Positions 22,466 through 63,053 of a DNA stretch of 64,000 nucleotides are shown one piece after another (position 1 is the first letter of the stretch; each line of letters opens with the position of its first letter). The translations under genes and the position numbers were made by a program. The notes under the pieces were generated by a model. It did no database searches. It was not told the DNA's origin and was given only the letters and a program-made list of their open reading frames with translations. The DNA comes from Octopus sinensis (taxonomy: Eukaryota): the NCBI RefSeq assembly GCF_006345805.1, contig NC_042999.1, positions 123,256,001-123,320,000 on the forward strand, written 5' to 3'.

Positions 22466-22500
<35 letters not shown>

Positions 22501-26584: not shown

Positions 26585-26622
<38 letters not shown>

Positions 26623-32812: not shown

Positions 32813-33158
32813 GATGAAGATAATGATGAGGGTCCAGTAGATGGTCCCTATGTAATTCCAACTCAGATTGGTAAAGAGACACTACGTATTGGGAAGAGCT
32901 TGGATAGAAGGGACCCATCATGGAGTAGACAGAATGTCGTAACCATGACAGCAGAAAGCAGGGGTGAGACGGGGTGTGATTCTGGGTCTGGAGAACGTCG
33001 CAGTGGTGGAAATCGAAGACCTGGAAGACTACTTCCGCCTACTTCTGTGATGGTAGCGCTGTCCATTGTGGCAATGGCAACAGCAGCTTTGTGTGCGTAT
33101 TGTTCAATGAGTGGATCCAATGTTCTCACTGTCAGCATTCCTTCAAGTGCCCTCTTAC
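32813..33158 (+). CDS. Exon A of an EGF/TNFR-repeat type II membrane protein: N-terminal tail plus signal-anchor helix (DEDNDEGPVDGPYVIP...MTAESRGETG...RRPGRLLPPTSVMVALSIVAMATAALCAYCSMSG...SALL)
   Basis: Long pyrimidine tract ending ctccag at 32812. The frame is open across the whole exon (ORF 32753-33220). Donor is C|gtaagt at 33159 (phase 1). A hydrophobic stretch at about 33047-33106 is preceded by Arg-rich residues. In-frame ATG in good context (accATGa) at 32945. Confidence 0.85.
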
Positions 33159-33244
33159 GTAAGTTATATGCTTCTTATTTTAAATTTTTCTTTTTACATC
33201 ATATTTATACTGACTGCTGAATTAGTACAAAATATTAATTTATA

Positions 33245-33455
33245 ACATTGCTTTCAAATTTTGGCACAAGAACATCAATTTCAGTGGAGAGGGTAAGTCA
33301 ATTACACCAATCTCAATACCCAATACTTACTTTATTGACCCTGAAAGGATGAAAGCCAAAGTTAACTTCAGTGGAATTTGAGCTCAGAATGTGAAAACAG
33401 ATGATATACTACTAAGCATTTTGCCCAGCATGCAAACAATTCTGTCAGCTTGCTA
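33245..33455 (-). mobile_element. Family-B SINE antisense in the intron after exon A. Other copies: 34485-34650(+), ~42300-42480(+), 63785-64000(+)
   Basis: Reverse complement of gcaagctgacagaattg...ctgagctcaaattccactgaagttaac...ctttcatcctttcagggtcaataaagtaag. Confidence 0.8.
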
Positions 33456-34174
33456 TCTATATTTATTCCTAATGTTATTTTACAATACATACTGCTAAAA
33501 TTGTGCCTCTGGTTCAAATTCTGCCTGGATTTTTATATGTCTGATGTATAATTAACTCCAGGTTAGATTAGCTAAACAAGATAAAAAATGGAGTCAAGGA
33601 CAGGAAGTTAAACCAATTAGATGTTATAGTATCAATTTTACAGTTCACAGTCAAAAATGACTTCCAAGTCCTGGAAGAGGTAGTTTTCAAAAACAAACCA
33701 TATCTCTCACCTTTCTAAGAAACCCAAACATATAGTGCATAGTTGACATTTTAGAAAACAAAAAAATTACTTCTGTGTAGCATTTCAATTAAAATATATT
33801 TAATAGAATGCTGTATGAGTTTTTCTTTCATTTTTCTTATAATTGTTTCCAGTCTCTCTTTGATAAGTTAGCTTGTAACACAAATGAAGTTCCATGTTTT
33901 GACTACTTTTAACATTACAATTCATATTACAAAAATTTATAGAGTTGATAATTTTTATAATAAACATTATACTTTAAAATTGAACTCATATTCTTATATC
34001 AATGTATAATATTTCATGCATAGTACCTATGTGAAAAGAAGCACTCAGAACTTTTTTTATATCTATATTTTCATAAGTCAGTCTGTCAAATATTTAGAAT
34101 CAGAATCTTGAACCAGATTATAATTAAATAAATTTAGCCAGTCTTTAACAAGAATTTATCATGAAAAGTTTCAG

Positions 34175-34875
34175 GCTTGGTTGAAGTGTGGTAAAAAGTT
34201 TGCTTCCCAACCATATAGTTTTGGGTTCAGTTCCACTGATTTGAACCATGGGTTTTTAAGGTATGGCTGTGTGGTTTTAAAGGTATGGCTGTGTGGTAAG
34301 AAGTTTGTTTTCCAACCACATGGTTCAGGGTTCGGTCCCATTGTGTGGCACCTTGGGCAAGTGTCTTCTACTATATCTTCAGCTTTGTACGTGGATTTTA
34401 GTAGATGGAAACTGAAAGAAACCCTTTGTATGTATATATATATATATATATAATATATATATATATATTATATATATATATACAGGGTGGCAAGCTGGCA
34501 GAATCGTTAGCATGCTGGTTGAAATGCTTACGTTCTGAGTTCAAATTCCACCAAAGTCAGCTTTGCCTTTCATCCTTTCAGGGTCGATTAAATAAGTACC
34601 AGTTACACACTGAGGTCGATGTAATCGACTTAATCCCTTAGTCTGTCCTTTTGTGTCTGTGTGTGTCCCCCACCACTGCTTGACAACCAGTGTTGGTGTG
34701 TTTATATCTCCATAACTTAACAGTTTGACAAAAGAAACTGATAGAATAAGTATTAGGCTTTAAAAAAAGTATGAAGTAAGTTCTGGTGTCAATTTGTTCA
34801 GCTAAAACCCTTCAAGGCAGTGGTCTAGCATGGCTACAGTCAAATGACTGAAACAAATAAATGATAAAAGATAAA
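34175..34875 (+). mobile_element. Family-A SINE with duplicated head, split by a family-B SINE inserted in its internal (TA)n
   Basis: A-head twice (about 34175 and 34270), A 5' half to 34430, (TA)n, B copy 34485-34650, A 3' half 34655-34875. Confidence 0.8.
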
Positions 34876-37167
34876 TTGTGTGTTTGATGAAATTGAATTT
34901 TATTTGAAAATATTTGAGTTGTTTCTTTAATCTTGGACATCTATAACCCTATTACTGGTTTATTATTAACAATTACCCTTCTCTATTCAAAAATTATGTT
35001 TTTCCTGGTCAATGTTCTCTAATATTAAATTTGTTAAATTTTTTTTTAGCTAAAAGAAATTAATATTTAATCATTCCAAAGTAAAAAATTGCAAAATTAT
35101 TTCAATATCTTGTTGCTTTCAAAATTGGCTTTCACTTTCTTATATGCATATCATAAAAGCCATTTATGCTTTTATTAAATTTTTTAAAAAAACAGTCATT
35201 ATGTCTTAACTTTTCAGATAAAAATTAAACTATTAACATTGTAATGCTTTTTCACTTTATGATTTTTATGATCTTTTCATATGTTGACAGGGGATTTGAG
35301 GGTTCTCTAAATTTAGACATTGCCATTAATTAATGGGTAGAAATGTTAATAATTATAATTTTGTTTTAGTTCTGCTTTCAATGAGTACATGTAGAAAAGT
35401 AATGTGACTCTAATACTAGGAATCTAGAAAATTACTTTTAAATCTACAAAAATCAAAAATTAAAAAAATAAATAAGTTATAGATTTTTCTTCTTTTAATC
35501 AGCAAACATATTCCAGCAGTTGCCTCCAAATATTTAATTTTTATTAAAGCAACAACCTTAAAATTCTTTGGTTTTGAAACCTAATACTGAGAAACAAACA
35601 TATCAAGATCACTCACATTCCTTATACCTCCAGATCTGAATATAACAAGTAGATTATATTTTCGAAGTTTAATTTTTTTCTTATATTAAACAGTAATTAA
35701 ACTATTAAAGAGGCTAAAGTACAAAATAAAGTCTCCATTTGTTCAGAGAGTTATTTTATTAGCAGTTATGCACTGACTTGAAATATGCAAGCAAAAGTTA
35801 TTCAACAAGTTTTACAAATTTTACAAAGCCAGCAGAATAACTAGTTCAGTTTGAGTTTGTGACCACTCGTCAGAACTTAATAAAGTTTGCTTGGTTTTTT
35901 AATAACATTAAAAGCATTCTGAATCCCTTTTGATAACTCTCTAAGAGAATGCTAAAGAAAAAAATCTGTTTTAAATCTGGGATAATTGCTGAAATTCAAG
36001 TAGTGAAGTGGTAGTCCTTATTAGCACTAATTTATTTGAGAAAAATATTTTTCGTCTCAGAATACCAAAATATTTCAATTTATGTCTACTTTGCATAATT
36101 TTTCATAATAACAAACTTGGGATGGTTATTCACTATTTATTGGAATTGAAGTGGTACTGGAAACTGGTAGTCAAGTAATATCCGGTGATCTCTTCTAAAT
36201 ATCACTAAATGTCAATTTAGCAAGTGTAGTATTTTATTGTTATGTTTATTGCCTAAATTCATACCCCAGAGAACAGTGGCCACATTCCTTTTCTCTATAT
36301 TCTTTTCTGCAATATAAGCATTATGGGAAAGTCTACTATTTAAAGCATGACAGTCGTTTTACATTAGACAGAAATTAAATATGGGTGGGAAACAAATTCA
36401 CTATAGGTTTATTTCTCATAAAGTATTCTTTCTTCTTAATGTTATATTCTCATATGAATCAAGTTATCTTACTGATAGTTTCACAAGTTCATTCGTCCCT
36501 TTCATAATACCCTTGTGATTAAACATGTGTAGCTAACTGGAAATTGATATCAAAGTAACCTTTAACCTTAAATAAATTTTACATTAGTTTAAGAAGCACT
36601 TAAATACTATTAGTTTTTTTAAAGAAATTATATTCTTGATAAAAAGATTTATATATAATTATTACAACATAATCAATTATGCTTTTTCTCTGTATTGCTA
36701 TATTGATATTTTATAACAATTATTTAACTTCAGTTTATACTTCCTTATGTAAACTCTAACTTATTCTTAAATAACTTAATTGTTGTTTTTTTTTTGGGCT
36801 TTAAAACAATGACAAACATTTCATATTGTTGAACACATGTCATAGTTTCAGTTGAAGAAAAGAATTCTTTAAATTTTAACCCTATCATTTTGTACAGTTG
36901 TTAATCATATAAACATTTTCCAATTGTACTATTGTCATTGTATTATGCTCTTTAGCGTATGATTATTGTTCTTCTTTCAATCTACCTTTCTTTAAAGGTG
37001 TTCCATTCCCATTAAATGACAATTGTTAGTGTCAGGCTATAAATCCAATTATATAATGTTGACTGTTATAAAAGATAAATCAATACTAGTCAACACCAGA
37101 AATAAGAAACAAGGCAGAATATATTTTATTTCTATTCTTAACATGTAGAGGCGCAAAAACTAATTGT

Positions 37168-37400
37168 AGAGGCGCAATGGCCTAGTGGTTAGGGCAGCGG
37201 ACTCGCGGTCGCAGGATCGCGGTTTCGATTCTCAGACCGGGCGTTGTGTGTGTTTATTGAGTGAAAACACCTAAAAAGCTCTACGAGGCTCCGCAGGGGG
37301 TGGTGATCCCTGCTGTACTTTTTCACCACAATGGCGGTGCCCCAGCATGGCCACAGCTCAAGAGCTGAAACTGGAAAAACAAACAAAACAAAAAAAAAAC
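37168..37400 (+). mobile_element. Young CpG-rich tRNA-headed SINE (family D). A second copy lies at about 53215-53400(-).
   Basis: GGCGCAATGGCCTAGTGGTTAGGGCAGCGGACTCGCGGTCGCAGGATCGCGGTTTCGATTC has intact A and B boxes but no tRNA 3' acceptor stem. 3' end ggcggtgccccagcatggcc...ctgaaac plus an A-rich tail. Confidence 0.85.
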
Positions 37401-37489
37401 ATAAATGTTTTTGCTGTTTTCATATTTTTTTTACTGTGTCCATTTTATTTAAATCTGTGTATTTATGTATAACTTTATTTTTCTTTTAG

Positions 37490-37576
37490 GTCGAGTGCGA
37501 AGTTTTACTGAACATCCGAACCTGTCTGAGTTAACTCTGAATATCACTACGCTACATGCAAACTTCAGAATTCTTG
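37490..37576 (+). CDS. Exon B: stalk with furin-type site (R)RVR/SFTEHPNLSELTLNITTLHANFRIL
   Basis: Acceptor tttcttttag|G and donor G|gtaagt. 87 nt, phase 1-1, open in the frame inherited from exon A. Contains two N-glycosylation sequons (NLS, NIT). Confidence 0.8.
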
Positions 37577-37895
37577 GTAAGTAAATTTACACTCATACTG
37601 ATTTTTACATTTTCAAACAGCAATTGTTGCACATGGTGCATTTGATGGACATACAACCTGAAATGGAAAGAATTGAATTCAAGAATATTTACTGAAATAG
37701 ATGGGAAATAATTTCTGAAATACCAAAATAACTATTTTGTAAAGTAAAAAGGTAAATTTACTGAATATTGTTTGAAAATACAGCCAAACTAAAACCTAAA
37801 GCATTATCATAATCATCAAGAAGAAATGTGTTGAAAATCAAATTTGGTCTTGTTACAAATATGTAAAAAGGAGACAAATATCGTTTAGATGCAAT

Positions 37896-39127
37896 TATTG
37901 AGTCATCCCATAAATAATGCAGTTTTTTTATACTGCTATTATTTTTCAAAATTAAGAGAAACAAAGTTCTTTTTAAACTAAAATATCCTCTCCTTCATTT
38001 TCTACAATGCTTTTCCATCTATCTGGTAGACTTGCAAGGCCCCTCTTACAAAATTCACTTGTCCATGACGAAAAATATTCCTCCAGTATTGCTCTGACCT
38101 TGTCTACAGAATTCATATTTTTTCCGTCCAAATGATTTTGAAGACTGCAGAATAAATGATAATGAGATGGGGGAATGTCTGACAAATATGGTGGATGGGG
38201 CATTGTTTCCCATTCAAACTGTTCCAGCCTTTAAAATGTCATCCTCACTGTATACAGCCGAGCATTATCCTGAGGGAAGAACACCTTTTGTCTTGAAATC
38301 AAAGATGGTTGTTTTTCTTCTAACACTGACTTAAGCCACTCAAGCTGCTCACAGAAGATTTCTTTTGGTTTGTGTTTAAAAGTTCAAAGTGGACTAAACC
38401 TTTCATATCCCACCAAACAGGTAACAGCACATTACGTGGGTGAAAAACCTTCTTTAGCCTGAAGTGCTGGTGTTTCTCCTTTCCCTACCTACTGTCTTCG
38501 GCACTTGACATTTTTATAGAGAACCCATGTCTCATCACCAGTCATTATTCAGTCCAAAAAAGGTTCACTCATGAGATGTGACAGCAAAGAAGAGCACACA
38601 TTCTGCATCTGATTAGACTTGGAAAGTTTGTGAGGAACCCATTGACCCAATTTGCTGAATGGTTGAATTACCAAATTCAAGCTTCTCTGTTAGTTCCTCA
38701 ACAGTTATGATGAAATTTTGTTCCACCGGGGTTTGCGGGATGTCCTCATCAAGCTCTACAGATCTTCCAGGACAAAGCTTGTCTTCTAGGCTGTAGTTTC
38801 CAGCTTGGAATTTCTGGAACCACTGTTGACACTAGCTTACGCTTGTTGTCCATTCCCCATACACTGCATTAATACTCTTTACACTTTCTATTGCATTGTT
38901 GCCTTTATTGAACTCAGAAAGTAAATTATGCCAAATATACTCTTTTGTCACTTCCATTATAGTTTTGCAAAAATGACTGTTAAAACTGAATTTGCACTAA
39001 GTATAAGGACAAGGTAAAATTACTACCTGCTTTTATAGCAAGATGATGCAGGTAGTTTATCCTGCCCCCTCCAACTTTTAGTTTATGCATTTTAAAAAAT
39101 ATGCATTATTTATGGGATGGCCCAATA
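37896..39127 (-). mobile_element. Full-length (about 1.23 kb) decayed mariner (DD34D) element
   Basis: TIRs TATTGAGTCATCCCATAAATAATGC / GCATTATTTATGGGATGGCCCAATA with TA ends. Minus strand encodes WWDMKGLVHFELL, QDNAR and HPPYLSDIPPSHYHLFCSLQNHLDGK with stops and frameshifts. Confidence 0.9.
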
Positions 39128-41299
39128 TAACGAACAAATCTGTACAAATAAACCTATCATTTACAATATATGGGAGTTATTTGTTGCTTAACTTTGTAAA
39201 TGTCATTTATGAATCAGGAACTCTGAATAGTATAAACAGTATTATTTCTCATTGCAGCAGAAATTAGTTATGTTTTTGTTAGCTCTGTCATGAAATAAAG
39301 TTTAAATAATATATAATAGAAGTATTTAATAATGTTTGTTATGTAAGAAAATTATAATATCTGACTTGTATAACAGAACATTTTTATACAAGAAAAACCC
39401 TATCCAGGTTTTATTGTTTCGTAGTGGAAAGTACTGTGAAATTTGAGCTTCTCTCATTTGAAATGATGGAATGAAATCAATATGGATAGGTGAGTTAATT
39501 AACATAATAAGCGATCGCATTACCTTCTAATATTGGTGCAGAATTGATAAATATTTCTGGTTGATTAAATCAAGCAAATTGAGGGAAGGTGTAATCCATA
39601 GTGGTTAATGTGACATGATGATAACAAAATGTATAACATTTAGACATCATAGTCATCATACTCCACATATGTTTAAGAAATCTAATGAGGACCATCCTGC
39701 TATGAAACTTACCATAAAGTGATGATCAAAATGTTGACAGTTACCACACTCAATATGTGAAAGTTGAAATTTCTGCATTAACACATCAGGACCAAGCAAA
39801 TATTACAAAATTTTGAAAAGCTGATGGGAATAGGACCTGTACTTGGTTAATGCTAAAATCATCCTAACACTTCAGATGACTAAAGCTGATGAACACTTTT
39901 ACATCAACGTATCAAACAGACAATTTGGTACCAATACATGATGTTTTGATGCCAATGTTTTATCTGAAGACATCATCAAAAATTAAACATCTTATCAACT
40001 GAACTGGTCACTTACAGAATATATTTAATATTAATTAGAAATGAGAATTAAAAAAATAAAAACTCATACCAAGTGTTAAGTATGTTTTATTTATTCATCT
40101 TATTAAGGAAAGCAAAGGAAGCTTTTTGATTTTCATCCAACAAAACTTTGTTTTCTTTCAATATTTCACACATCTAAAGTAAATTGGGAAGTTTTTCCTA
40201 GCATTGTAATAACATCTAGTGTACAGTACTAAACACCAACTTTCTATTTCCACTTACAGCTTTTATTATTTCTTTCCAAACACTTTAGCTGTAACTGTTC
40301 AAATTGCATTTACTATTTGATATAATGGAACTATTTATCCATTACAATTCTAAAGGTATCAGATTATAGAAAGTCACTTATTTCTTTCATTTAGATACAG
40401 AGCACGTAAACCATTTGTTACAAGTTCTCACATCTATTTGCAACATTGTAATTATACTTCTTACATAGATAAAGCTTACTTTTCATATTCATCATAGATT
40501 ACAAAAGCAGTGTATCATAAGTCTCAACATAGATTAAACTGAGTGAATTGGTACTAAGAGGCAGTTCAGTATAATGGCTTGTTTATCATGCAGGTAGTTT
40601 TTATCTAAGAGAGATTCAAATATTTTGTGAATGAGGCTGATGCATTAGTCAATATAAGGGAGAAATTCTGCCTGGTATTATACATGGAACTTTTAAGCGA
40701 TGAATATCTTTTCAGGAAGAAAGTACCTCTTGGCTCTTAAAAGTGCCCAATCATCTCAATAAAGCTTTTGCTTTGCTGAGTTTATTGGATTTCCAGGGTT
40801 GGTTAATAAAGTTACTCATACTATATGTAGGGTCCAAGTTGTACATAGAGAAGAGGAATTCCTGTAGGTGATTAATGTTTTAGATTTAGTCTTGTTAACT
40901 GTTAATTACCCAAACCACTTACAAGAGGTTCTTGTTTGTGGTTAGAAAGGAAATGAATAGAATAATGGTTGTTTTCATCAGCTCATAAGGGCTTTTAGTT
41001 ATCAACAATAGCATAATTGCAACTGAAATAGAAGAGGAAGAAAATCAGGAAGATATATTGATGATGTAGTGATTGAGTTTATCTTTTGCATATTCTGAAA
41101 TGGAGCGATCAGCTAAAACTTTTCTAATGCAAACAATTAAACCAACATAGTCCATAGGCTGAGAATTTCACCAAAGTATTTTCTTGGTAATCTGTCTTTA
41201 TTGATAACTATACCAGTGATGTTATGAAAGAGGACTACGGTGAAAGTCAGATGAATTGATGTATAACATATGAAAGCAGGTCACTTGTAAATCTGGAGG

Positions 41300-41700
41300 T
41301 TCCAAAGTAAGACATTTTGGTAACGGAAAAAAAGTAAAATTTCTGAGTAGGGCAGTGAGAACTGAGCTAGTCTTCACCTATGAAAGGATTCCACTTGCTG
41401 TCTCTTATCAATCAAAGCCATCTTGAACTAGTTTCAGCTGACATACCTATTTCTTTGATGGCTTTCTTCAGCTGTCTGGGTTCCAAACCTATTTTCTGCA
41501 GCAAACAGTGCTCTGATCCAGATGGAAAGCTCATCAGTCACTCCAATGGGGAATGATACTGCATACCTGTTCTCGACAAGGACCTCATTGACTAAGTTTG
41601 ATATTTCAATTTCTTTACCTGGTGGGAATTTTTTTTTCCAGGTAGTATTGAAATCTTTAAAAAACATTCAAGAAAAGAAAATGTCATGGTTTTCCAAAGC
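41300..41700 (-). mobile_element. Decayed HERO/NeSL-like RLE retrotransposon C-terminus
   Basis: Across frameshifts: TTWKKK...SNLVNE...YAVSFPIGV and LLQKIGLEPRQLKKAIKEIGMSAETSSRWL*LIRDSKW, resembling VPWEE..LV.EC..FPVEVG and L..IG......AIK....AE.AS.WLW. Confidence 0.5.
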
Positions 41701-44620
41701 ATTTTCTCTGTTTTGTAAATGAAATGCACTTTAAAAGGTTCAAATTATAAATAACTCAGGGTATTTGTTAGAAGATATCTATACATTCACACAGCTCACA
41801 CATAATCATCAAAAAGGTAGTTGGTTACTAAGGGCAGCTTAAAACCATAATAGTAGGAACACTAACCAGTAGATAGTGAAGATTATAGATGCCAATATAA
41901 ATTGGTGATCAGTTTTGTATCTTTGTATTACATAAATAGCTTGATTAATCAGATTTTGTAAGAAAACTGGAAAACTATAACAAAATAAGTGTAAGATTGA
42001 GTGAGACTTGATAGAATATAGTTTTGGTTTGTATCGGGATATGGTATGATAAATATTATAATACAATTATGAGAGATCATTAAATAAGAAGAAACAACTG
42101 TTTTTCTTTTATCAACCTAGAGAAATCCATTAACATGGGTTCCAACTTTATAACTTGGTGGACAATAGAATTTAAAATGGAAGAAATTTAACAAAATCTA
42201 CTTAGATTTTATACACAAAATCATCTGAAAGATTGACAAGAATTACTTTCTATTGTATATAAGAGCCAGTGTGTTGTATGTTAAGATCTTAGATAAAATG
42301 CCTTTGTGCATTTAGTTGCATCCCTGTCATTTTAAGGTTCAAAAGCTAGTAGAGCAGGCTTTACCTTTCATTTTTCAGGTGTAGATAAAATACGTACCTG
42401 TCAAGTACTAATTCATTGTAATCAGTTGTTCTCCCTCCGTAGCATATTTTGGCTGTGTGCCCATATTAGAAATCGCTATACATTGAGACTAGCTGTTTTT
42501 TTATGAAACAAATACAAAATTTCATAGGTAGTATTAGAACAAAGAACTGATGGCTGAGAATTGAAATTGCTATTAACTGCATAACCTTTACTTCAGTTTT
42601 GTACTGAATTTTCAGACAGGTTGAAAAAGCATTATGAGTCAGTGGGGGATGTTCCCAGTATGATTTCTTTTAGATAAGAATTTACTCAATCATTCTGGAA
42701 AAAATTTTGATGTACTATTTACTTTTATTCTGAAATTACCCAAAATTCTTATATTTTGTCATCTGGAAGCTATTTATTTTTTTACAAAAGCTATTTTTTC
42801 TTTATTTTTCTAATTTTAGAAATATTTTCATTTATCTTTCACATTGAAGGATAAAAGTAATGGGTAACCTCATATATTTTTCTATAGTTTGGACTTCAGC
42901 CAGTCTAGCTAAAAGTATGCTTCCACTATATCAAGCACTGATAGTGGAAGGATGGCTAATCTATAAGTCTAGGTGAAGATTTTACTGAGAATTACACTTT
43001 TGTTCAAATGCACTTCAAATATTGATATCAATTCACATTTTCAACATCATTATTCCTGAAATAGTAACACATGCTAATATATCAGCAATATTCTGATTTA
43101 CTAATCTTTGAAACTATTTTAGATTAATGTTATTACTCTTAAAGACAGTTTTCTTATAAATATTTAAGCTTTCAAATAAATAAAACAATTTGAATCTGAT
43201 TTTGCTGCATGTCTATTAAACATAAATTTAGTATTTTAATAACTTGTTTTGAAATTGTTATGCTTATAGTCTCTCCAAACTTCAAATATTTGACATGTAC
43301 TTTTTCAGTATATTTCTTTTGATTCATTCGTAAATCATGCATTCTAACCAATCTGACATATTATTAGTTTATTTAATAGAAATTATTTCTATAGGTGCTG
43401 AATCTGAGATGAACATAACCAGAACTATACTTTTGCATCTCTGAATTTTCTAAACCAGACAAATGAGGATGTTTTGCAATGAACATAACCATAACTGTAG
43501 TTTTCATCTTTGGTTTTTCATTCTATTAGACTCTTCTTCAATATACCTAATTTAATTATGTAGGAATTATTTCCTAATATTATTAACTGATAAATTAAGG
43601 TGGTGAAATTGGAAGAAATGGTAAGGCACTATACCATGATGCTTACACTGTTTAGATTCATTTCTCTGCAGCTGAGTTTGAAATTTATCAATGTTGAATT
43701 TGCCTTTCATTTCTTAAGGATCAGCAAAACCAGAAAAAAAGGGGTGTGGGAGGATACTAATAGTATACTTTTGTATACTTAATTCACTCCTCACTACTTT
43801 ACAAAAAAATTATCCTTCCTTGTCTAAAGATAAAATTTAATATATCTGAAAAGTTGATTTCGTTTACCTTCCTGCCATCTCTCGTATAAAACAATATTAA
43901 GATTCTTCAACCTCTTATAGATTTCTGTTTCACTGCTTTTTATTTTTGTTTTTTCTTCATGCTTACAGTGATTAAAAAATGCTTCTAAATTAGATATCTT
44001 AATCTTTTATGTAGCACAGACAGTCAGGAGCAATATTAAATGCTTAATGGCATTCAGTTATTGCTTAATAATATTGAATACAAATTTAATATTAACTTTT
44101 ATCAATCTCAGAGGATTCTATATAATATGAACCAATAATATAGCTAACTGTTAAATAGAAAAAAAAAAAAAAATAGGGTCCAGTGTGTGTCCAATGGCAA
44201 TAAATCAATATTACTATCATGATTTCCGAACTAGTGATCGATTTTCAATCCATATTAAACCAAAAGAAAAACAACACATGGTCAGCTAGAACCAGTACCA
44301 ACAAATAATTTCTATTAGTCTTCTCCCTGAAAGCTGATAAGTGTTATTATACACATAACATTAGAGATATATTGATTAAGAAAGCTATAGACTCAATGTC
44401 TGCATACATTATGCTGCTATTAACTTTGTAATTGTTGTACAAAAAAAAAACATTCCTTTTTCTTCTTATCTTACTATTTTAATTTTGTATTTTCAATCAA
44501 TAGTACTCTGAAGATGTGCCAGTTGGCAACTGAGAGGTATCAAATTTATGTTAAAATTGCTAGAGAATATATATATGTATATATATATATGTAAGTGTAT
44601 GTTTCTGTTTATATGTGTGA

Positions 44621-44653
<33 letters not shown>

Positions 44654-44660
44654 CACACAC

Positions 44661-44693
<33 letters not shown>

Positions 44694-45220
44694 TATATAT
44701 ATAAATACATATATAAATATATATATACATATATATTTATGCATATATATATACATATATACACATATATATATACATAAATATATATACATATATATAT
44801 ATATACACATATATGCTTATATATATATATATATATAGGGATGCTTTATGAAAATATATATATATATATATACATGATTATATTTTTGATCTGCTATATA
44901 GATGAAGATATTTCCTCTGTCTGGCTGCTTTTCTCTCTACAAAATGGAAAGTTACATTGCAGAACAGTCATTTTAAGGAGTTGTATTTATTTATCACTCG
45001 ACGAGATACATCTGCACCATCAGATGCTCCTGAACCAGTTGTTGAGTGTCCCACCCAAGAGGAATCGATGCTAGATATGTTGAAACAATTGTCGTGATTA
45101 GTAATAAATTCTCATATCTTCTGTTTTTCATTTGCTATATATATATATACATATACCTATACACATATATATATATATATCTATACACACACATATGTAT
45201 ATATATGTAAATATATATAC

Positions 45221-45255
<35 letters not shown>

Positions 45256-50162: not shown

Positions 50163-50285
50163 ATTCAGCTGAGTGTGAGTCTGATCCTTCAAAATGTACT
50201 ACCTATGCTGTTTGTGACAACCAACAGGGAGAAATGACATGCAGGTGTCAGAGAGGTTACTATTTGGATGGACAGAAGTGTCAAC
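50163..50285 (+). CDS. Exon C: EGF-like domain DSAECESDPSKCTTYAVCDNQQGEMTCRCQRGYYLDGQKCQ
   Basis: Acceptor tttcattttcag| and donor C|gtaata. 123 nt, phase 1-1. Six Cys spaced C-x6-C-x5-C-x8-C-x1-C-x10-C, typical of EGF, with a degenerate calcium-binding-type N-terminus. Confidence 0.9.
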
Positions 50286-51434: not shown

Positions 51435-51497
<63 letters not shown>

Positions 51498-52925: not shown

Positions 52926-52956
<31 letters not shown>

Positions 52957-53466
52957 TATGTAGCAAATCTAATATAAGCTGTAGATCCAACTCAGGGATG
53001 GTTCCAGGTGTGGTATTTGTATAAAACAACACAAGTAGAGTTGAAAATTTACAACAGCAGTTTCGATAACATTTTATTCATACATTCTCAGATTACATGA
53101 TAGGAAAAAAAAACTCACTATCATCAGATAAATTGTAAGCACTTAAACAAGCAAGAAAAAACCAGATGATCCATTTCCCAACTACTATCATGAACATGTA
53201 AGTTCATATAAGGGAAGAAAAAGTGAGAGAAAGTTGTGGTGACAGAATACAGCAGGGTTTGCCACCACCCCCTCCTGGAGCCTTATCGAGATTTAGGTGT
53301 TTTTGCTCAGTAAACATTCAAAAAGCTTGGTCTGGGAATCGAAACCGCGATCCTATGACTACGAATATACTGCACTAACCACTGGGCCATTGTGCCTCCA
53401 TGTATATATGTATATATATATATATGTTTATATGTATGTATATATATGTGTATATGTATATATATA

Positions 53467-54021
53467 TGTCAGGTCACTTTCGAGTGCTACTGGTAACACG
53501 TAAACCAGTACAACCTGTTGCATGGTCGGGTCGTTGGCGACTAAACCAGCAACCCCACCAAGCTTGCTTGGTGAGGAGGGTATTTATTGGACACCTTGCG
53601 GGATGAAAAACAAAACCCGTGAAAGGCCGGAGGAACTCTTGAGAGTCAACGGCCATCCAATAAATGTCTTTGGGCTGTATCATGCACGGGGACATAGAAA
53701 TGATCGGACTGAATACCCAATCATGTGATTAAACCATTGGGAGTGAAGGACTCCTTGCCTTTCTTAGGGCATCCTTCTAGGAGAAGGTAACTCAGGTAAC
53801 TGGGATAACTCCAGCATAAAACCTGCGGCTCAGTGGTTACCGATGATGTTGACTTGTTCTTCTTTTCGAATTATGGCTGCTGTTGCTTAGTGAGTGGGAT
53901 TGACTCAGTGCACAGCCTTTCCTCACTTTAAAAAAAATCTTCTTGCACAGGCATTGCATGATAACAACATTGATTAAGCTTCGTGCAATGGCCATACTCG
54001 ATAACGAGGGGGCAGCCACCA
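53467..54021 (+). mobile_element. CpG-rich 555-bp structured repeat inserted in a TA microsatellite (RTE-type 5'UTR fragment or solo LTR)
   Basis: Sharp composition change, TG...CA ends, internal AATAAA and several short hairpins. The gggcatccttctaggagaaggtaactc and cagcaacccca motifs recall RTE-like 5'UTRs. Confidence 0.5.
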
Positions 54022-54061
54022 TATGTAGATTCATATGTATGTATGATTGTGTATGCATATA

Positions 54062-54125
<64 letters not shown>

Positions 54126-55379
54126 TATACATATATTTATTTATTAACAATATTAATAATATAAATTACTACAAAGTTGCATAGCATTACCTTTAAATTC
54201 ATTAATTTATATACTGCCTTACATAGACCTACACATGTTTCAATTTCACCGATTAGTAACTGTTGCAATTAGTGCATTTTCTTCATGGTCTTTACTTAAT
54301 ATCCTTCAATTTGGCCATTTAAAGATTTTCTTTTATCTAATCTACATTGTATAATGTAGAGCTGTCCATTAAGTTAGACTCAAACAGTCTCCATCTGAAG
54401 TTTTTATTGGATAATTATTTTTAGCCCATTACTTCAAAACGTTCTATTGTTTAAATGAGTAATTATTACTTCTGAGTTTCAGCTAGCTAGGAAACGTATG
54501 TAGCCTGGATTTTACTTGTTCCATTCCCTCAATTTGGATATTTATTCATAGCAACCCTATTTGCTCACGGGAAACTATAAAATAACATTTTTGAGCTTTA
54601 TTGAACTTTGATATGAGAAAAACCTACACCCTTCAATGCCAATAAACTATTATTGTTCCTGAAAGTTGCTTTTTATACTTATTATGATTTGCTCAAAGCT
54701 TACTAACTTCTTACACCTAGGTGTGTAATAAGATACATATCCTATCTTCTTTACAATTCTGTGATTAAAAAGGTTCCTTTTCAACCTACTCTAGAATAAT
54801 TATAATAATTCAAGGCTTATTGTACTCTTAAAATATTCTCATAGTATTTGCCTATATTTTTTAATCTGATACATTCAAGTGTCCAATATCATAATAAATT
54901 AATTAAATACAAGGAATTAGTTTAAAAACCTGGCATTGCAGTACATTTCTCATATAAAATTCAAATTTTGCATCTACTAATTTGCTCAATTTATACACAG
55001 TTATATAAATGAGATGAAACAAAAATTTGTAAAAGGTTTGTTAGTCAAAACTGTCATTAGTCAGTATTAAGAATACTCACATAATGGAATTGTTACAGCA
55101 ATTTTAAATAAAATAATCAATACAAATTTTGCATATTGGTATTCTGCATACAAATTTGGAGTCAGAGAACATATGTGTGTGTGTTATGAATGTATGTCTA
55201 ATTCCTCTGATGCCACTAATTTCAGTGGAAGTGTCAATACTTAATTTTATTTCATTACTTCTCTCTTACTGTATGTATTTATATCTTAATCTTTATCTTT
55301 TACTGATTTTAGCCAAAAGCTGGGTCCATGCTGGGGCACCACTTTTCAGTGTGTTGGTTGTTTCTTTTTTGTACTGTTT

Positions 55380-56260
55380 TTTTTTTTTTATATAATAACA
55401 AGTTAGATGGAGCTGCTCTTCTTTGTGCTTCCTGCTTTGATGTGGGCTCATCTGGGATTTTAGATAGAAATTTGTCCACACGCTCTTGGAAGACGTCCAC
55501 ATCTACACCCTGCATATGTCTGAGGCTGTTTGGCAGGATGTTAAATAGTTGTAGACCCTTAAAACTCAAGCTGTTGCAGTACTGGGTCCTTATATTACAT
55601 AAAAAAAAAGTGTGATCTTTAGTATCATGCAGTGCCATCCAGTTCAGTGATTAGTGGTTGGCATACCTTTCATTTCCAAAGCTGGGAACCAGACCTTCAG
55701 GTTCTTCCATATGTATATCACTGCATATCTTTCACTCCTCTCTAGTTTCAGTTTTTAGAGCCTCTCCTTGTAGCTCATCTGTTTCATTGAGTCATTGTTC
55801 TTTGTGTAGTGGTGCTGGATTGCCTCAAGTTCTGCCATTAGTTTGATTGATGTTCTGTGGCAACCACAGTTAGAAGCAATAATCCAGGCAACTGAGAATA
55901 AAAGTTTCCCATAGGAAATACATGGTATCCTTTTTTTCTGGTTCTGAATGATCACAGAATCCATTCAGCTACATACCCATACCTTGTTGCCATCTTGGTA
56001 GTATGCACATGGAACTGTTTCATCATTACTCATGTGGATTCCCAGGTCATGCACTGATACAAACTCTGGGATTGCACTATCCCTAAGTCCTGTGTATTAT
56101 AACTGTAGTTTGTCTGTGTGCCAATCGTGGAGTACTTGAAACTTCTCAGCACTGAACTGCATGCTATTTTCATCAACCCATTTGTAAGATTCTAGATTCA
56201 TCTTGAGAAAACTACTTTTTATAATAGTTTGCTAATCAAGGAACTGTTTCATCATTTAGT
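55380..56260 (-). mobile_element. CR1-clade LINE 3' end
   Basis: Minus-strand MKQMSYKERL... and RTQYCNSLSFKGLQLFNILPNSLRHMQGVDVDVFQERVDKFLSKIPDEP...RAAPSNLL, followed by an A-rich tail. Confidence 0.85.
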
Positions 56261-57958
56261 GTCTGCTTTCTGTGGTGGCAAGGGTTAGATGGTTTGACTA
56301 AAATTGAAGAGATGCATCAGGTTCCAATCTGATTTGGCACAGTTTCTTATAGTTGGATGTCCTCCTAATACCAACCACTCCAAGAGTGTAATGGATGCTT
56401 TTCATGATCCACCAGCATGGGTGCCAGTTATGTGACACTGGCGAATTACAGTATATAGTGGGTAGTTACCTAAAGTGTCTGCTTATAAGCTCCAGTCACA
56501 AAATATAATTTACTACCATTTAGTATTTATCAGAAATAATAATATTACTTTTAGATATTGTTATGTTGGTAGTAGATTCTTTCTTAAGTTATCTCTGTGA
56601 ATGTTCCCATCTAATAGTTCACTAGCTTATTTTGAGGTAAAGCAAATAAATATTAGACTAATCCCCTGTCTAACTACTTGTTAAAAGACAAGTGATCATT
56701 GTACTATTGTCAGAGGATAAGGTTTATAATCTCCACTACTTAAACCCACTCTTGGGTTTTTGTTCGTTTTTTTTTTAATATTTTGTTTCATTTGCTCTCT
56801 TCTATTCTTGTCAACTTTTTAGCTTTCTATTTTCATTTATTTACTCTGCTCTGTTAACTTCTTCCCTACTAAATTCAGTTCCAAACACTTAGAATGATTT
56901 AAATATTAACTTCTATGAGTGTATTTTTCATCTCACTTTTCCTGCATTCCACTCTAATTTTTTCCCTTTATGTCTTTTTTTATTTTTTAAAGCCTTCTCT
57001 ATATTTGTGCAAATGTTGATTTTTCTATTCAAAACTGTGACACCTTCCTGATTATTGTATACAGTCCCCAGCAAACAATTGAGTACATTGTATTGTATAA
57101 AAGGCTAAACACTAGGTGGAATTAAGCTTACAATCTCTTTTTCAGTCCACTACTTTTTGTTACTGAAGGACATAAACTTCCTCAATGTCCATATACTTCA
57201 GTAATATTGATATTTTAACCATTTGTTTGCTTGTATGTTTATTTTACTTTTAATGCCCATGCAGTATTTGATAAATCATTTGTTTTGTTCACATTCTAGT
57301 CATCTCTGATATCCTACAGTATTACGTTTTTCCATAAATAAGTAGAAAAAAATCTAATAGACTTTTGTTATAGCCTAGCACATACTCTGGCTTTGTCAGT
57401 AACTCGATGGAGAAGTATCATACTTTTCTCCGTCATTTATAATAAAAGTTGGAGGATTTTTAATTAAACCGACTGAATATTTTACTTTGTATGTTACCAG
57501 TGGTTGGTTCTATATCATTTAAATATACTGCAGAACATCAGAAATGATGTTGATTGATTATTGATTACAAATCATTTTGAATGCCTCAGAAGAGAAAGTT
57601 CTTGAATAAAATTACCTTACATATAAAATTTGTACTGAAAAACAAAACAGGAATATCATTTATTATGAAAATTTCCATCTTATTTTTACTGCAGTATCAA
57701 ATTATATTCAAGAAATTTTTTTTAATTTTTTTTTTTTTTTTACCTAATGATCAATATGTTGATAATTTTTCTTGGGTCTATTTTTGACTGTTTGCACATC
57801 TAAATGCCTGATATTTTCCCTTCTTATTCCCTCCATTCCACCCAACCAAAACAAAAGAAAATGCAATTGAAGCAATATGATCATATTAACAAAAAATCTA
57901 CATCAGAAATAATATTTAGAAATATGTTCTACATTTGTAATTCCCTTTTTTCTTTCAG

Positions 57959-58033
57959 TTTGTCGAACATCTTGTCCACGTGGATACTATATGGTTAAAC
58001 CTTGTACGACTAAAAAGGATGTTGTATGTAAAG
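57959..58033 (+). CDS. Exon D: TNFR-like cysteine-rich module LCRTSCPRGYYMVKPCTTKKDVVCK
   Basis: Acceptor ccttttttctttcag| and donor AAG|gtaagg. 75 nt, phase 1-1. Pattern C-x3-C-x2-G-x-Y-x4-C-x4-D-x2-C resembles TNFR/NGFR repeats. Confidence 0.88.
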
Positions 58034-59170: not shown

Positions 59171-59204
<34 letters not shown>

Positions 59205-59206
<2 letters not shown>

Positions 59207-59540
59207 CGCAGGAGTGGCTGTGGGTTCAGTCCCACTGCGTGGCACCTTGGGCAAGTGTCTTCTACTATAGCCTCGGGCCGACCAAAGCTTTGTGAGTGGA
59301 TTTGGGGGACGTCGTGTATATATATATATACGTGTGTGTTTGTGTGTCTGTGTTTGTCCCCTAGCATTGCTTGACAGCCGATGCTGGTGTGTTTATGTCC
59401 CAGTCGCTTAGCGGTTCGGCAAAAGAGACCGATAGAATAAGTACTGGGCTTACAAAAGAATAAGTCCCGGGGTTGAGTTGCTCGATTAAAGGCGGTGCTC
59501 CAGCATGGCCGCAGTCAAATGACTGAAACAAGTAAAAGAG
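59205..59540 (+). mobile_element. Young family-A SINE with head deletion
   Basis: CpG-retaining copy close to consensus. Confidence 0.9.
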
Positions 59541-59896
59541 TATATATATATATATATCTTATGTATAATAAAATACAATGTGTGTCCTGTTGGCCATGCT
59601 GGTAGGAGGCTAAAACAACAAACCAAGTGGGAGTGAATGAGTAACTGAACTGCCAGTTCGAGAGAAATTTGATTTCATTCAGCATTTGTTGTAGTTGGGG
59701 ATAATTTCAATAAATCATAAATTCAGTTTATATGCTAATATACCTTTTTATAATTTTTTGTCCTAATTCATGGCACATGACCATTTTTGAGCCATTTTCG
59801 CTTGGTTCATTTTTGTCATCTGTGAATGTCTGTACATGCAAACACGCAAACATGCACATATATCATATAGATATATGTATAGCATGCATACACATA

Positions 59897-59938
<42 letters not shown>

Positions 59939-60550
59939 TATTTGTGTTATTTATATATATATAAGTATATATGTTTATATAGATACATACAATGGGTGAT
60001 AAAATACTAGTTTAATTGTTATATAGGTAGTCACCAAGTGGAGCTACAGAGATCAGAATCATAAACTTCAGCTTGTTCACCAGGGTGAATTAGAGCAGAG
60101 GTAGAAAAGTCAGCTAGAAGAGCAATCAGAATGAAGCTGGTTTGTAAGTAGAAAGACAGACAGACATTAAACAGGTATAAGGAATATACTTATATGCAAG
60201 TTACATATACAATTTACATGATGTAATCAGTACATCTCTTTACTGCTGGTTTGGATGGTTGATGACTGGTTGGTATAACAATGCATCTTATGTAAGCAGG
60301 TGCAATACGGAGGCAACATTGTACATATGCATAATAAAAGCTAAGTGAAGTATCAGCTAGTATGGATTTTGATAGCTCAATGCAGCAGAATCACTGCATT
60401 CCCTTGAAGATGAAAGGAATAGATGTGTGTGTATATATATGTATTTATACACATGCACATATATATATGTACACACATACAAGCATAGTTCGACAGACTC
60501 CAAAGAGGTTGGTGTTTGTCTGCATTGGCAATACTTGTGTAGTTAAATTG

Positions 60551-60810: not shown

Positions 60811-61029
60811 TGATTTTACTACTAAATATATAAGCAACATACATGTGTGTATTACATGTGTGTACATATATATACATACACACACAAACACTCACAAATA
60901 TATTATACACAGAATTCTGATGAGCTGACATTCAATTGTATCAATACAATGATACACCCTGAGACTATAGTTGCATATGTTATATAATAATATAGAAATA
61001 TTCTTGAGTTCAAATATGAGTGACACAAT

Positions 61030-61333
61030 TTATTCTTTTATTTGTTTGTCGATTGACTGCGGTCATGCTGGAGCATCACCTTTTAGTTGAAGAAATCAAT
61101 CCCAGGACTTATTCTTTGTAAGCCTGGTACTTATTCTATCAGTCTCTTTTGCCGAACTGCTAAGTTGCAGGGACGTAAATGTACCTACATCAGTTGTCAA
61201 GTGATGGTGGGGGGACAAAGACACACACATAAATATATACATATATATATACATATAAATATATATATACAAGCTTCTTTCAGTTTCGTTTGGTTAAGAA
61301 GTAAGCTTCTTACCATGCAGCCATGCCTGTACC
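61030..61333 (-). mobile_element. Family-A SINE, antisense, internally deleted
   Basis: Reverse complement of the family-A 3' module and head. Confidence 0.85.
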
Positions 61334-61461
61334 TGTAAATTAATGTAATAATTCAATTTTCTCATTATTTTATGATATATATATATATGTATGTGTATAT
61401 AGGTGTGTCTGTATATATGTTTATGTATGCATTTGTCTGTATACATGTGAATATAATATAT

Positions 61462-62090
61462 GTGTAGGTGTAGCTGTGTGGTAAGAAGCTTGCTTCCCAT
61501 CCAAGTGGTTCCAGGCTCAGTCCCACTGCATGGTACCTTGGGCAAGTGTTTTCTACTATAGCCTGCCAACCAAAGCCTTGTAAATGGATTTGATAGATGG
61601 AAACTGTCGTCTGGCACCTGTGTCGGTGGCACATAAAATCACCCACTACACTCTCGGAGTGGTTGGCGTTAGGAAGGGCATCCAGCTGTAGAAACACTGC
61701 CAGATCTGACTGGCCTGGTGCAGCCTTCGGGCTCACCAGACCCCAGTTGAACCGTCCAACCCATGCTAGCATGGAAAGCGGACGTTAAACGATGATGATG
61801 ATGATGATGATATATATAATAATAATAATAATAATATGAGGGAATATTATTCCAAACTCATATACATATATATATATGTATATATTTGTGTGTCTGTGTA
61901 TGTACCCACCACCATCAACTGATACTAGTTTGTTTACATACCTGAATCTTAGTGGTTCAGTAGAAGAGACCAATAAAATAAGTACTAGACTTACAAAGAA
62001 TAAGACCTGGGGTCAATTTGTTTTACTAAAACTGCTTAAGGTGGTGCTCCAGCATGGTCGCAGTCAAACAACAGAAACAAGTAAAAAAAA
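61462..62090 (+). mobile_element. Family-A SINE split by a (GAT)n-tailed family-C SINE (61610-61810). Other C copies: ~14780-14900(-), 15340-15540(+), 17185-17310(+), 19155-19300(-), 24260-24375(-), 27295-27500(-), 32025-32300(-), 52190-52420(+), 56265-56450(-)
   Basis: C consensus gagtggttggcgttaggaagggcatccagctgtagaaac...catgctagcatggaaagcggacgttaaac(gat)n. Confidence 0.85.
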
Positions 62091-62369
62091 AGAATGTGTG
62101 TGTGTATGCACAAAAGTGGAGGTATGACTGTAATTAAGATTTTGCTTTGCAACCTATTCGTTTTCGGTTCAGTCAAAAGCTTATCATATATCTACTGTGT
62201 GTGTGTGTGTGGATAGACTGACAGACAGTCAGATATGTAGCTGCATGCATATGTTTGTTTATACATCATTTTCCTGATTCTGAAAATATGAAACTCAGAC
62301 AAGCTTGTATAGCATGCCACATATTTCTAATCAATGATTCAGACTCTAGAGCCTGTATATGTATATATA

Positions 62370-62425
<56 letters not shown>

Positions 62426-62427
<2 letters not shown>

Positions 62428-62776
62428 CATAGGAGTAGCTGTGTCGTAAGTAGCTTGCTTACAGACCACATGGTTCCGGGTTTAGTCCCACTGCATGGCA
62501 CCTTGGGCAAGTGCCTTCTACTATAGCCTCGGGCCGCCCAAAGCTTTGTGAGTGGATTTGGGAGACGGAAACTGAAAGAAGCCCATCATATATATGTTTG
62601 TGTGTCTGTGTTTGTCCCCCCAACATCGCTTGACAACCGATGCTGGTGTGTTTACATCCCCGTAATTTAGCGGTTTAGCAAAAGAGACTGATAGAATAAG
62701 TCCTGGGGTCAATTTGCTCGACTGAAGGCGGTGCTGCAGCATGGCCGCAGTCAAATGACTGAAACTAGTAAAAGAG
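62426..62776 (+). mobile_element. Young full-length family-A SINE
   Basis: Near-consensus copy from ggcataggagtagctgtgtcgtaag to gactgaaactagtaaaagag. Confidence 0.9.
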
Positions 62777-62981
62777 TAAATATGCAATTAATGCTGGCTG
62801 CATAGCTGTCAAACAGTTTGGTATTGTATATACTCTAACTCTGAAATATGCATTCTACATATATATAAATGTCATCATTACATTTAGTAAGATCAAGGTT
62901 ATACAAATTCACGTGTATGCTTATCCAGCCCAACATTAATGATAATAATTTGTTATTTAAATTTTTGTTTGTTTTCTTCAG

Positions 62982-63053
62982 CTTGTGATGTATGTAAGGG
63001 GACGGAGTATGAAATCACACCTTGTCGAGCTGCCCAAAACAGAAAATGTATTG
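62982..63053 (+). CDS. Exon E: second TNFR-like cysteine-rich module ACDVCKGTEYEITPCRAAQNRKCI
   Basis: Acceptor ttgttttcttcag| and donor TTG|gtaagt. 72 nt, phase 1-1. Cys spacing C-x2-C-x9-C-x7-C parallels exon D. The gene continues past the window. Confidence 0.88.

What the first reader, a model, noticed from the sequence alone, without database searches (positions are those of the whole stretch)
32813..63053. Type II membrane protein carrying EGF and TNFR-like repeats in a ligand-like (N-in, furin-shed) topology
Seen: five exons splice in frame to tail - signal anchor - RRVR/S - EGF - TNFR-like x2(+). Arg residues (RRSGGNRRPGR) lie N-terminal of the only hydrophobic helix, and glycosylation sequons and disulfide domains lie C-terminal, implying N-in/C-out. 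Established: TNF receptors are type I or type III, with cysteine-rich domains N-terminal to the TM and a C-terminal signalling tail, whereas type II plus furin shedding is the design of TNF ligands such as EDA, APRIL and BAFF. Inference: this may be an uncharacterised invertebrate shed decoy or modulator, or a hybrid ligand whose effector domain lies downstream of the window. I do not recognise an orthologue.
Basis: partly seen in the sequence, partly recalled or inferred. Interest (0 to 1): 0.75.

Follow-up and report, generated by a model that had tools for sequence, protein, structure and literature searches.

The report
Type II EGF/TNFR-repeat membrane protein fragment
The window holds the middle of a real, conserved animal gene whose protein most likely sits in the membrane "backwards" for a TNF-receptor-like protein (tail inside, EGF and receptor-type cysteine modules outside and after the anchor), but both ends of the gene are missing, so shedding and function remain guesses.

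Summary
Five + strand exons (32813-33158, 37490-37576, 50163-50285, 57959-58033, 62982-63053) have canonical AG/GT sites and splice in frame. The 234-aa product passes Pfam gathering scores for EGF_3 and TNFR_c6. Two exons are under purifying selection in other species' contigs.

Corrections:
- "Exon 1" starts at a conserved splice acceptor. Its frame upstream of the first Met is conserved, with an in-frame 6-nt indel, so at least one 5' coding exon is missing.
- The hydrophobic stretch is therefore internal. With a 19-residue core and a +4 versus 0 flanking charge, this favours an N-in signal anchor over a signal peptide.
- The "TNFR x2" are two four-cysteine B2-type half-modules. The first pairs with the EGF C-terminal hairpin and mimics DR5 CRD3.
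- RRVR|S is only a minimal R-x-x-R motif, and it spans a splice junction.

The gene runs off the 3' end of the window, so a TNF-homology domain, a second membrane helix or a signalling tail cannot be checked. An exhaustive search of 1.84 billion proteins with exon 1 found no annotated relative.

Verdict: a real gene fragment, probably type II. The ligand-like or decoy reading is untested. Moderate interest.

The parts
32813..33158 (+). Internal coding exon E1 (phase 0 acceptor, phase 1 donor): end of the cytoplasmic region, Arg-rich flank, membrane anchor and start of the stalk
   Evidence: It has a Py-tract/AG acceptor and a GTAAGT donor. The acceptor position, reading frame and amino-acid sequence are conserved in L003-L010, while the introns are unalignable. 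After the Met there are 16 synonymous and 3 non-synonymous codon changes; before it there are 7 and 8 plus an in-frame 6-nt indel.
32813..32860 (+). Conserved acidic cluster and Tyr motif in the tail (DEDNDEGPVDGPYVIP)
   Evidence: The other species reads DEDNEE--VDGPYVIP. A functional reading as a sorting or SH2-type motif is my inference only.
32945..32947 (+). First in-frame ATG (Met45 of the partial model, context ACCATGA); a possible but less likely start codon
   Evidence: Sequence. The ORF and amino-acid conservation continue upstream to the acceptor.
32996..33028 (+). Arg-rich cytoplasmic flank RRSGGNRRPGR
   Evidence: It is identical in L003 and L009.
33029..33109 (+). Hydrophobic membrane segment LLPPTSVMVALSIVAMATAALCAYCSM (core 33047-33103)
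   Evidence: The Kyte-Doolittle 19-mer maximum is 2.18, and this is the only such peak in 234 aa. The amino acids are 100% conserved across species despite synonymous changes.
37490..37576 (+). Exon E2: stalk. It completes RRVR|S (33158 + 37490-37500) and carries sequons NLS (37519-37527) and NIT (37540-37548)
   Evidence: No cross-species data were available for this exon.
50163..50285 (+). Exon E3: one six-cysteine EGF module (cbEGF-like, D-S-A-E-C start)
   Evidence: Pfam EGF_3 30.2 bits against a cut-off of 28.5; EGF_CA is sub-threshold. The donor GTAATA is the weakest of the five.
57959..58033 (+). Exon E4: TNFR B2-type four-cysteine module CRTSCPRGYYMVKPCTTKKDVVC. Together with the EGF C5-C6 hairpin it forms a six-cysteine TNFR_c6 match (50246-58029)
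   Evidence: Pfam TNFR_c6 on residues 173-209. It aligns to DR5 CRD3 (CRKCRTGCPRGMVKVGDCTPWSDIEC) and to OPG. It is 75/75 nt identical in L001/L002 against 83-90% in the flanks.
62982..63053 (+). Exon E5: second B2-type module CDVCKGTEYEITPCRAAQNRKC. It ends in phase 1, so the gene continues beyond the window
   Evidence: No further cysteine-rich exon lies in 63054-64000.

Best explanation
This is the central part of one real protein-coding gene on the + strand, and both of its ends lie outside what can be seen. The protein most likely inserts as a single-pass type II (N-in/C-out) glycoprotein. It has a cytoplasmic N-terminal region of unknown full length, of which the last 78 or so residues are here. 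That region includes a conserved acidic/Tyr motif and an Arg-rich flank. Next comes a signal-anchor helix with a 19-residue core, then a ~47-residue stalk with two N-glycosylation sequons. Beyond the stalk are one EGF module and at least two TNFR B2-type disulfide modules, and the chain continues 3' of the window. SHOWN: the exons, the frame, the domain types, purifying selection on E1 and E4, the internal position of the helix and the charge asymmetry. INFERRED: the topology (from the positive-inside rule, the helix length and the location of sequons and disulfide modules), and the assignment of all five exons to a single transcript. WEAKLY INFERRED: release of the ectodomain by a furin-type convertase at RRVR|S, 19 residues past the helix. 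Given the TNFR-type modules, the most likely role is extracellular protein binding, either displayed on the cell surface or shed. Whether the partner is a TNF-family ligand is unknown.
For: Canonical splice sites and phase compatibility were found at all junctions. Pfam TNFR_c6 and EGF_3 score above their gathering cut-offs. OPG, DR5 and TNFR2 are the best PDB matches. E4 is 100% identical against 83-90% in the flanks. E1 has 16 synonymous and 3 non-synonymous changes with unalignable introns. The acceptor at 32813 is conserved, and in L003 an in-frame stop lies immediately upstream of it. The open frame before the Met has an in-frame indel. There is a single hydrophobic peak with a 19-residue core. 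The N-side flank is +4 net and the C-side flank is 0. No alternative ATG + hydrophobic + phase-1-donor first exon was found between E1 and E3. No extra A1-type exon was found in the introns.
Against: There is no transcript evidence. No SignalP or DeepTMHMM was available. The region before the Met is less constrained (7 synonymous, 8 non-synonymous changes), and Met45 has a good Kozak-like context, so a start at Met45 is possible. No upstream coding exon could be located in 32.8 kb. The 3' part is absent, so a second membrane helix cannot be excluded. RRVR lacks a basic P2 residue, and R-x-x-R motifs arise by chance. E2, E3 and E5 have no cross-species support.
Confidence: 0.5

Rival explanations
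1. It is an ordinary type I TNFR-like receptor. Translation starts at Met45 (32945), the sequence upstream is 5' UTR, and the hydrophobic stretch is a long cleavable signal peptide (cut near CSMSG|S). A transmembrane helix and signalling tail would lie 3' of the window.
For: Met45 sits in an ACCATGA context. Small residues follow the helix (AYCSMSG). Constraint is much stronger after the Met than before it. No upstream coding exon was found. TNFR modules are normally type I.
Against: The pre-Met frame is open in both species and differs by a 6-nt in-frame indel. It is 82% identical in nucleotides where the introns are unalignable. The n-region would be 33-34 residues with 6 Arg and the apolar core 19 residues, both typical of anchors rather than signal peptides (established knowledge, von Heijne rules). 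The homology block starts at the acceptor, not at the ATG.
Confidence: 0.17
2. It is a hairpin or multi-pass protein. The helix seen here is TM1, EGF and the TNFR modules form an extracellular loop, and one or more further helices follow downstream. The overall layout would resemble neuregulin-1 type III or astrotactin.
For: The gene continues in phase 1 beyond 63053, and nothing in the window constrains the C-terminus. A conserved cytoplasmic N-terminal motif suggests a signalling or sorting role.
Against: There is no positive evidence. Modular phase 1-1 cysteine-rich exon arrays usually belong to single-pass or secreted proteins.
Confidence: 0.15
3. The exons belong to two genes. E1-E2 would splice to something else, and E3-E5 would belong to a separate secreted or type I gene whose first exon was missed.
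For: Introns are 4.3-12.6 kb, there is no RNA evidence, and phase 1-1 compatibility is generic among extracellular module exons.
Against: E2's phase-1 donor needs a downstream phase-1 acceptor, and E3 is the next credible one. A scan of 33159-50162 found no ATG + hydrophobic + good phase-1-donor first exon. No other coding signal was found on the + strand nearby.
Confidence: 0.1
4. It is a decaying pseudogene or a chance assembly of ORFs.
For: No annotated protein matches in 1.84 billion representatives or in the 5.8-billion word-indexed set.
Against: E1 and E4 are under purifying selection across species, both Pfam hits are above threshold, and the splice sites and frames are intact.
Confidence: 0.03

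Closest known systems
TNF receptor superfamily ectodomains (closest solved: DR5/TNFRSF10B CRD3, osteoprotegerin/TNFRSF11B, TNFR2)
   Same: It passes Pfam TNFR_c6 above threshold. The cysteine spacing C-x10-C-x2-C-x3-C-x9-C-x7-C is identical in form to DR5 CRD3. It shares CR(T)(S/G)CPRG and a D-x-V-C-type ending.
   Different: The modules lie C-terminal to the membrane helix, the opposite of type I or type III receptors. After the first CRD-like unit the repeat is B2-B2 with no A1 module, and no A1 exon was found. An EGF module supplies the first 'A1' hairpin. The signalling tail, if any, would be N-terminal. No death domain or TRAF region can be assessed.
Type II, convertase-shed TNF ligands (EDA, BAFF, APRIL)
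   Same: The inferred layout is N-in/C-out with a short Arg-flanked anchor, and an R-x-x-R motif sits in the stalk.
   Different: No TNF homology domain is present in the window. The motif RRVR lacks the basic P2 residue that I recall for the sites of these ligands. The modules displayed are receptor-type, not ligand-type.
Teneurins (Ten-m/Odz)
   Same: Teneurins are the best-known animal family with an N-terminal intracellular domain, a single helix, a convertase site and then EGF modules (PMC6428715 for the architecture; the convertase site is from my own knowledge).
   Different: There is no Ten_N match even at E<=10. There is one cbEGF-like module instead of eight tenascin-type EGFs, followed by TNFR-type modules. 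Exon 1 has no teneurin hit in an exhaustive search.
Neuregulin-1 type III / astrotactins (hairpin proteins with EGF after an internal helix)
   Same: An internal helix with a cytoplasmic N-terminus is followed by extracellular EGF.
   Different: There is no sequence similarity, those proteins have no TNFR modules, and a second helix has not been seen here.

Membership tests
TNF receptor superfamily (TNFRSF) | At least one TNFR/NGFR cysteine-rich domain (Pfam PF00020) | tested here: met
   TNFR_c6 scores 41.2 bits against a cut-off of 29.4, E=2.2e-10, on residues 173-209. OPG, DR5 and TNFR2 are the top PDB hits.
TNF receptor superfamily (TNFRSF) | Tandem canonical six-cysteine CRDs (A1-B2 type) | tested here: inconclusive
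   One six-cysteine unit exists only by borrowing the EGF C5-C6 hairpin. E4 and E5 are adjacent four-cysteine B2 modules, and no A1 exon was found in the introns. More units may lie 3' of the window.
TNF receptor superfamily (TNFRSF) | Type I or type III topology: CRDs N-terminal to the transmembrane helix | tested here: not met
   The only helix in the window precedes the modules, and charge bias and sequons indicate N-in. A downstream helix cannot be excluded.
TNF receptor superfamily (TNFRSF) | C-terminal cytoplasmic death domain or TRAF-binding tail | not testable with these tools
   The 3' end of the gene is outside the window.
TNF ligand superfamily (TNFSF) | C-terminal TNF homology domain | not testable with these tools
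   There is none in the window. The gene continues beyond 63053 in phase 1.
TNF ligand superfamily (TNFSF) | Type II signal-anchor topology | tested here: inconclusive
   It is favoured by the internal position of the helix, its 19-residue core and the +4/0 charge asymmetry. No dedicated predictor or experiment was available.
TNF ligand superfamily (TNFSF) | Convertase site R-x-[K/R]-R in the stalk (in the shed members) | tested here: inconclusive
   RRVR|S meets only the minimal R-x-x-R form, and its conservation is unknown.
Teneurins | Ten_N intracellular domain and eight tenascin-type EGF repeats | tested here: not met
   There is no Ten_N or tenascin-type EGF hit at E<=10 and no teneurin among the exon-1 hits. 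The upstream tail is missing, so Ten_N was tested only on the last 78 or so residues.
EGF-module proteins | Six-cysteine EGF fold signature | tested here: met
   EGF_3 scores 30.2 bits against a cut-off of 28.5, and the pattern is C-x6-C-x5-C-x8-C-x-C-x10-C with GYY after C5.

The most novel reading that the evidence does not exclude
TNFR-type cysteine modules are anchored in the same (type II) orientation as TNF ligands. Such a protein could bind membrane TNF-family ligands in cis on its own cell. After convertase cleavage it could act as a soluble OPG-like decoy. If a TNF homology domain lies downstream, it would be a receptor-module/ligand fusion. Any of these would be a kind of TNF-pathway regulator not described so far.
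Probability: 0.1. Interest if true: 0.8.

Novelty: new variant of a known kind. Interest (0 to 1): 0.42.

Why it matters
TNFR cysteine-rich modules are known on type I or type III receptors and on secreted decoys. Surveys of invertebrate TNF/TNFR repertoires even filter candidates by type I topology (bioRxiv 10.1101/2024.07.27.603686, Methods), so an inverted-topology member would be missed systematically. If the type II reading is right, this gene would add a new way of presenting receptor-type modules. It would also be a candidate regulator for the lineage-specific TNF ligand expansions reported in molluscs. If it is instead a type I receptor with a long leader, or simply a modular adhesion or matrix protein, it is an ordinary lineage-specific gene.

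Tried and rejected
- **Orthologue search with the spliced 234-aa and 90-aa products.** The only hit was a spurious ORF over E4 from a related species. The word-indexed search also missed P0002, so its recall is imperfect.
- **Exhaustive HMMER search of 1.84 billion representatives.** It found one genomic ORF fragment (P0002) and a repeat-driven false hit to a bacterial protein (P0003).
- **Exact look-ups of the window's own exon-1 ORFs.** They are not on record, so no same-species contigs could be used to walk outward.
- **Search for the missing 5' coding exon.** I tried GC peaks, an ATG + phase-0 donor scan and a Pfam scan of all + strand ORF segments in about 22000-32812. Nothing credible turned up. 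The + strand ORF segments of 1-22000 were listed but not scanned with Pfam.
- **Missing TNFR A1-module exon.** The only motif hit, at 61117-61152, lies inside an interspersed repeat and has no splice sites, so I rejected it.
- **Alternative signal-peptide first exon for E3-E5.** None was found.
- **Teneurin identity.** Rejected.
- **Ephrin_rec_like/GCC2_GCC3 or furin-like repeat identity for E4/E5.** Neither was listed by Pfam even at E<=10, and the cysteine spacing differs.
- **Literature searches for a type II EGF+TNFR architecture and for the SRA run numbers.** Nothing relevant was found.
- **Rfam and tRNA scans of the window.** Both were empty.
Full report
**Setting.** The window is AT-rich (27-39% GC) and full of (TA/CA)n microsatellites and interspersed repeats. 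This fits a large-intron animal genome. The only relatives are short genomic contigs from public sequencing runs (Logan assemblies).

**Checking the observation.**
- Translating the + strand and reading the junctions gives five exons: E1 32813-33158, E2 37490-37576, E3 50163-50285, E4 57959-58033 and E5 62982-63053.
- Every acceptor follows a polypyrimidine tract. Four donors are GTAAG and E3's is the weaker GTAATA.
- E1 ends in phase 1 and E2-E5 are phase 1-1, so the joined frame is open for 234 codons.
- The product reads: tail, RRSGGNRRPGR, LLPPTSVMVALSIVAMATAALCAYCSM, a stalk with RRVR|S formed across the E1/E2 junction, the sequons NLS and NIT, a six-cysteine EGF, then CRTSCPRGYYMVKPCTTKKDVVC and CDVCKGTEYEITPCRAAQNRKC.
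- Pfam scores TNFR_c6 at 41.2 bits (cut-off 29.4) and EGF_3 at 30.2 bits (cut-off 28.5). The best solved-structure matches are osteoprotegerin, DR5 and TNFR2.

**Are the exons real?**
- A closely related species (L001/L002) has E4 identical at 75/75 nt, while the flanking intron is 83-90% identical.
- In a more distant lineage (L003-L010), homology to the window is confined to 32836-33174. That is E1 from 23 nt inside its acceptor to 16 nt past its donor, at 89% nucleotide identity, and the introns do not align.
- After the first Met there are 16 synonymous and 3 non-synonymous codon differences.
- Both results indicate purifying selection on coding exons. E2, E3 and E5 have no such support.

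**E1 is not the first exon.**
- 32813 is a splice acceptor, and the other lineage keeps a Py-tract and AG at the same place.
- In that lineage an in-frame stop lies immediately upstream of the AG.
- The 42-44 codons between the acceptor and the first Met stay open in both species. They differ by an in-frame 6-nt deletion: DEDNDEGPVDGPYVIPTQ against DEDNEE--VDGPYVIPTQ.
- This region is 82% identical in nucleotides where the introns are unalignable, although constraint is weaker (7 synonymous, 8 non-synonymous changes).
- I conclude, at roughly 80%, that it is coding and that at least one 5' coding exon is missing.
- I could not find that exon in the 32.8 kb upstream. It may lie outside the window.

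**Topology.**
- There is a single hydrophobic peak with a 19-residue apolar core.
- The 15 residues before the segment carry five Arg and one Glu, and the 15 after it carry no charge.
- The sequons and all 14 cysteines lie C-terminal.
- By the positive-inside and charge-difference rules, and because signal-peptide h-regions are typically well under 19 residues (established knowledge), this is best read as an N-in signal anchor.
- The internal position of the helix, at least 78 residues in, strengthens that reading.
- If translation instead started at Met45 (context ACCATGA), the n-region would still be 33-34 residues with six Arg, which is atypical for a cleaved signal peptide.
- No dedicated predictor was available, so topology stays an inference.

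**What the cysteine modules are.**
- E3 is a genuine EGF. It has a cbEGF-like D-S-A-E-C start and GYY after C5.
- The Pfam TNFR_c6 match covers the EGF C5-C6 hairpin plus E4. Its spacing, C-x10-C-x2-C-x3-C-x9-C-x7-C, has the same form as DR5 CRD3, and the two share CR(T)(S/G)CPRG.
- E5 is a further C-x2-C-x9-C-x7-C (B2-type) unit that follows directly, with no A1 hairpin.
- A scan for a skipped A1 exon found only a look-alike inside a repeat, without splice sites.
- The array is therefore EGF-B2-B2-(continues), one module per phase 1-1 exon. It is TNFR-like but not a standard string of full CRDs.
- Ephrin_rec_like and furin-like repeats were not reported by Pfam at E<=10.

**The proposed shedding site.** RRVR|S lies 19 residues beyond the helix, in an otherwise uncharged stalk. 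It satisfies only the minimal furin motif R-x-x-R, with Val at P2. No second species is available for E2. Shedding is plausible but unproven; I would put it near 30%.

**Relatives.**
- The spliced product found nothing but an ORF artefact over E4.
- An exhaustive HMMER pass over 1.84 billion cluster representatives with exon 1 found only the genomic ORF fragment P0002 and a false repeat-driven bacterial hit. Its cluster holds only one more genomic fragment.
- No annotated protein in those collections contains this exon, and the tail and anchor have no detectable homologue outside close relatives.
The ectodomain could therefore not be searched exhaustively or modelled.

**Comparison with known families.**
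- *TNFRSF.* The domain test is met, but the topology feature is not met as far as the window shows, and the tail cannot be tested. I do not file it as a TNF receptor.
- *TNF ligands.* The probable topology is shared, but the defining TNF homology domain cannot be tested.
- *Teneurins.* These are the classic type II + convertase site + EGF family (PMC6428715 for the architecture). They are excluded by the lack of Ten_N and of tenascin-type EGFs.
- *Hairpin proteins.* A layout like neuregulin-1 type III or astrotactin remains possible, because the 3' end is missing.
- *Literature.* Searches found no described type II EGF+TNFR architecture. One survey of invertebrate TNFRs explicitly filters for type I topology, so such proteins would be overlooked.

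**Verdict.** This is a real, conserved, apparently unannotated gene fragment. Type II topology is the best reading at about 0.5, against 0.17 for signal peptide/type I, 0.15 for hairpin and 0.1 for two genes. The ligand-like, decoy or hybrid function is speculation that depends on sequence outside the window. I rate it a new variant of a known kind, with moderate interest.

Noticed in passing
window 21908-22054, 45956-46262, 59222-59547, 61028-61606, 62434-62783 (also 27748-27849, 928-1026): There are many copies, about 77-85% identical and in both orientations, of one interspersed repeat of a few hundred bases (SINE-like). Their translations recur as '...AVGLNPEPCG...GRPKLCEWIWG...'. None overlaps an exon, but copies lie about 160 nt upstream of E2 (37169-37331) and about 200 nt upstream of E5.
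   Followed up: partly
window - strand 18250-18580, 19950-20400, 37973-38203: These are decayed, stop-interrupted ORFs that look by eye like mariner/Tc1-type transposase pieces (for example MPHPPYLSDIPPSHYHLFCSLQNHL). Pfam gave only a sub-threshold HTH_48 (Mos1 transposase) hit for one of them and nothing for the others. An inverted pair at 19791-19986 / 20262-20457 may be its terminal repeats.
   Followed up: partly
window - strand 12663-12938: An ORF fragment (GISKCVVLTLKQGKRV...DDDRY...) resembles the tail of a retroelement reverse transcriptase. There was no Pfam hit.
   Followed up: partly
window 32840-32860 (DGPYVIP): A Tyr motif in the cytoplasmic tail is conserved between lineages. From memory, pY-V-I-P resembles the preferred motif of PLC-gamma-type SH2 domains. 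This is a lead only and was not tested.
   Followed up: no
window 61117-61152: CKPGTYSISLFC mimics a TNFR A1 hairpin but lies inside the interspersed repeat and has no splice sites. It is a chance look-alike that could mislead exon finders.
   Followed up: yes
window 44493-45210, 52791-53032, 53928-54164, 59732-60010, 62255-62526 and others: Long (TA)n/(CA)n-type microsatellites generate many spurious 'IYIYIY/CVCVCV' ORFs on both strands.
   Followed up: no
tool behaviour (vs 27): The word-indexed protein search missed P0002 (96% identical over 71 aa to part of the query), which the exhaustive search then found. Negative results from the indexed search should therefore be read cautiously.
   Followed up: yes
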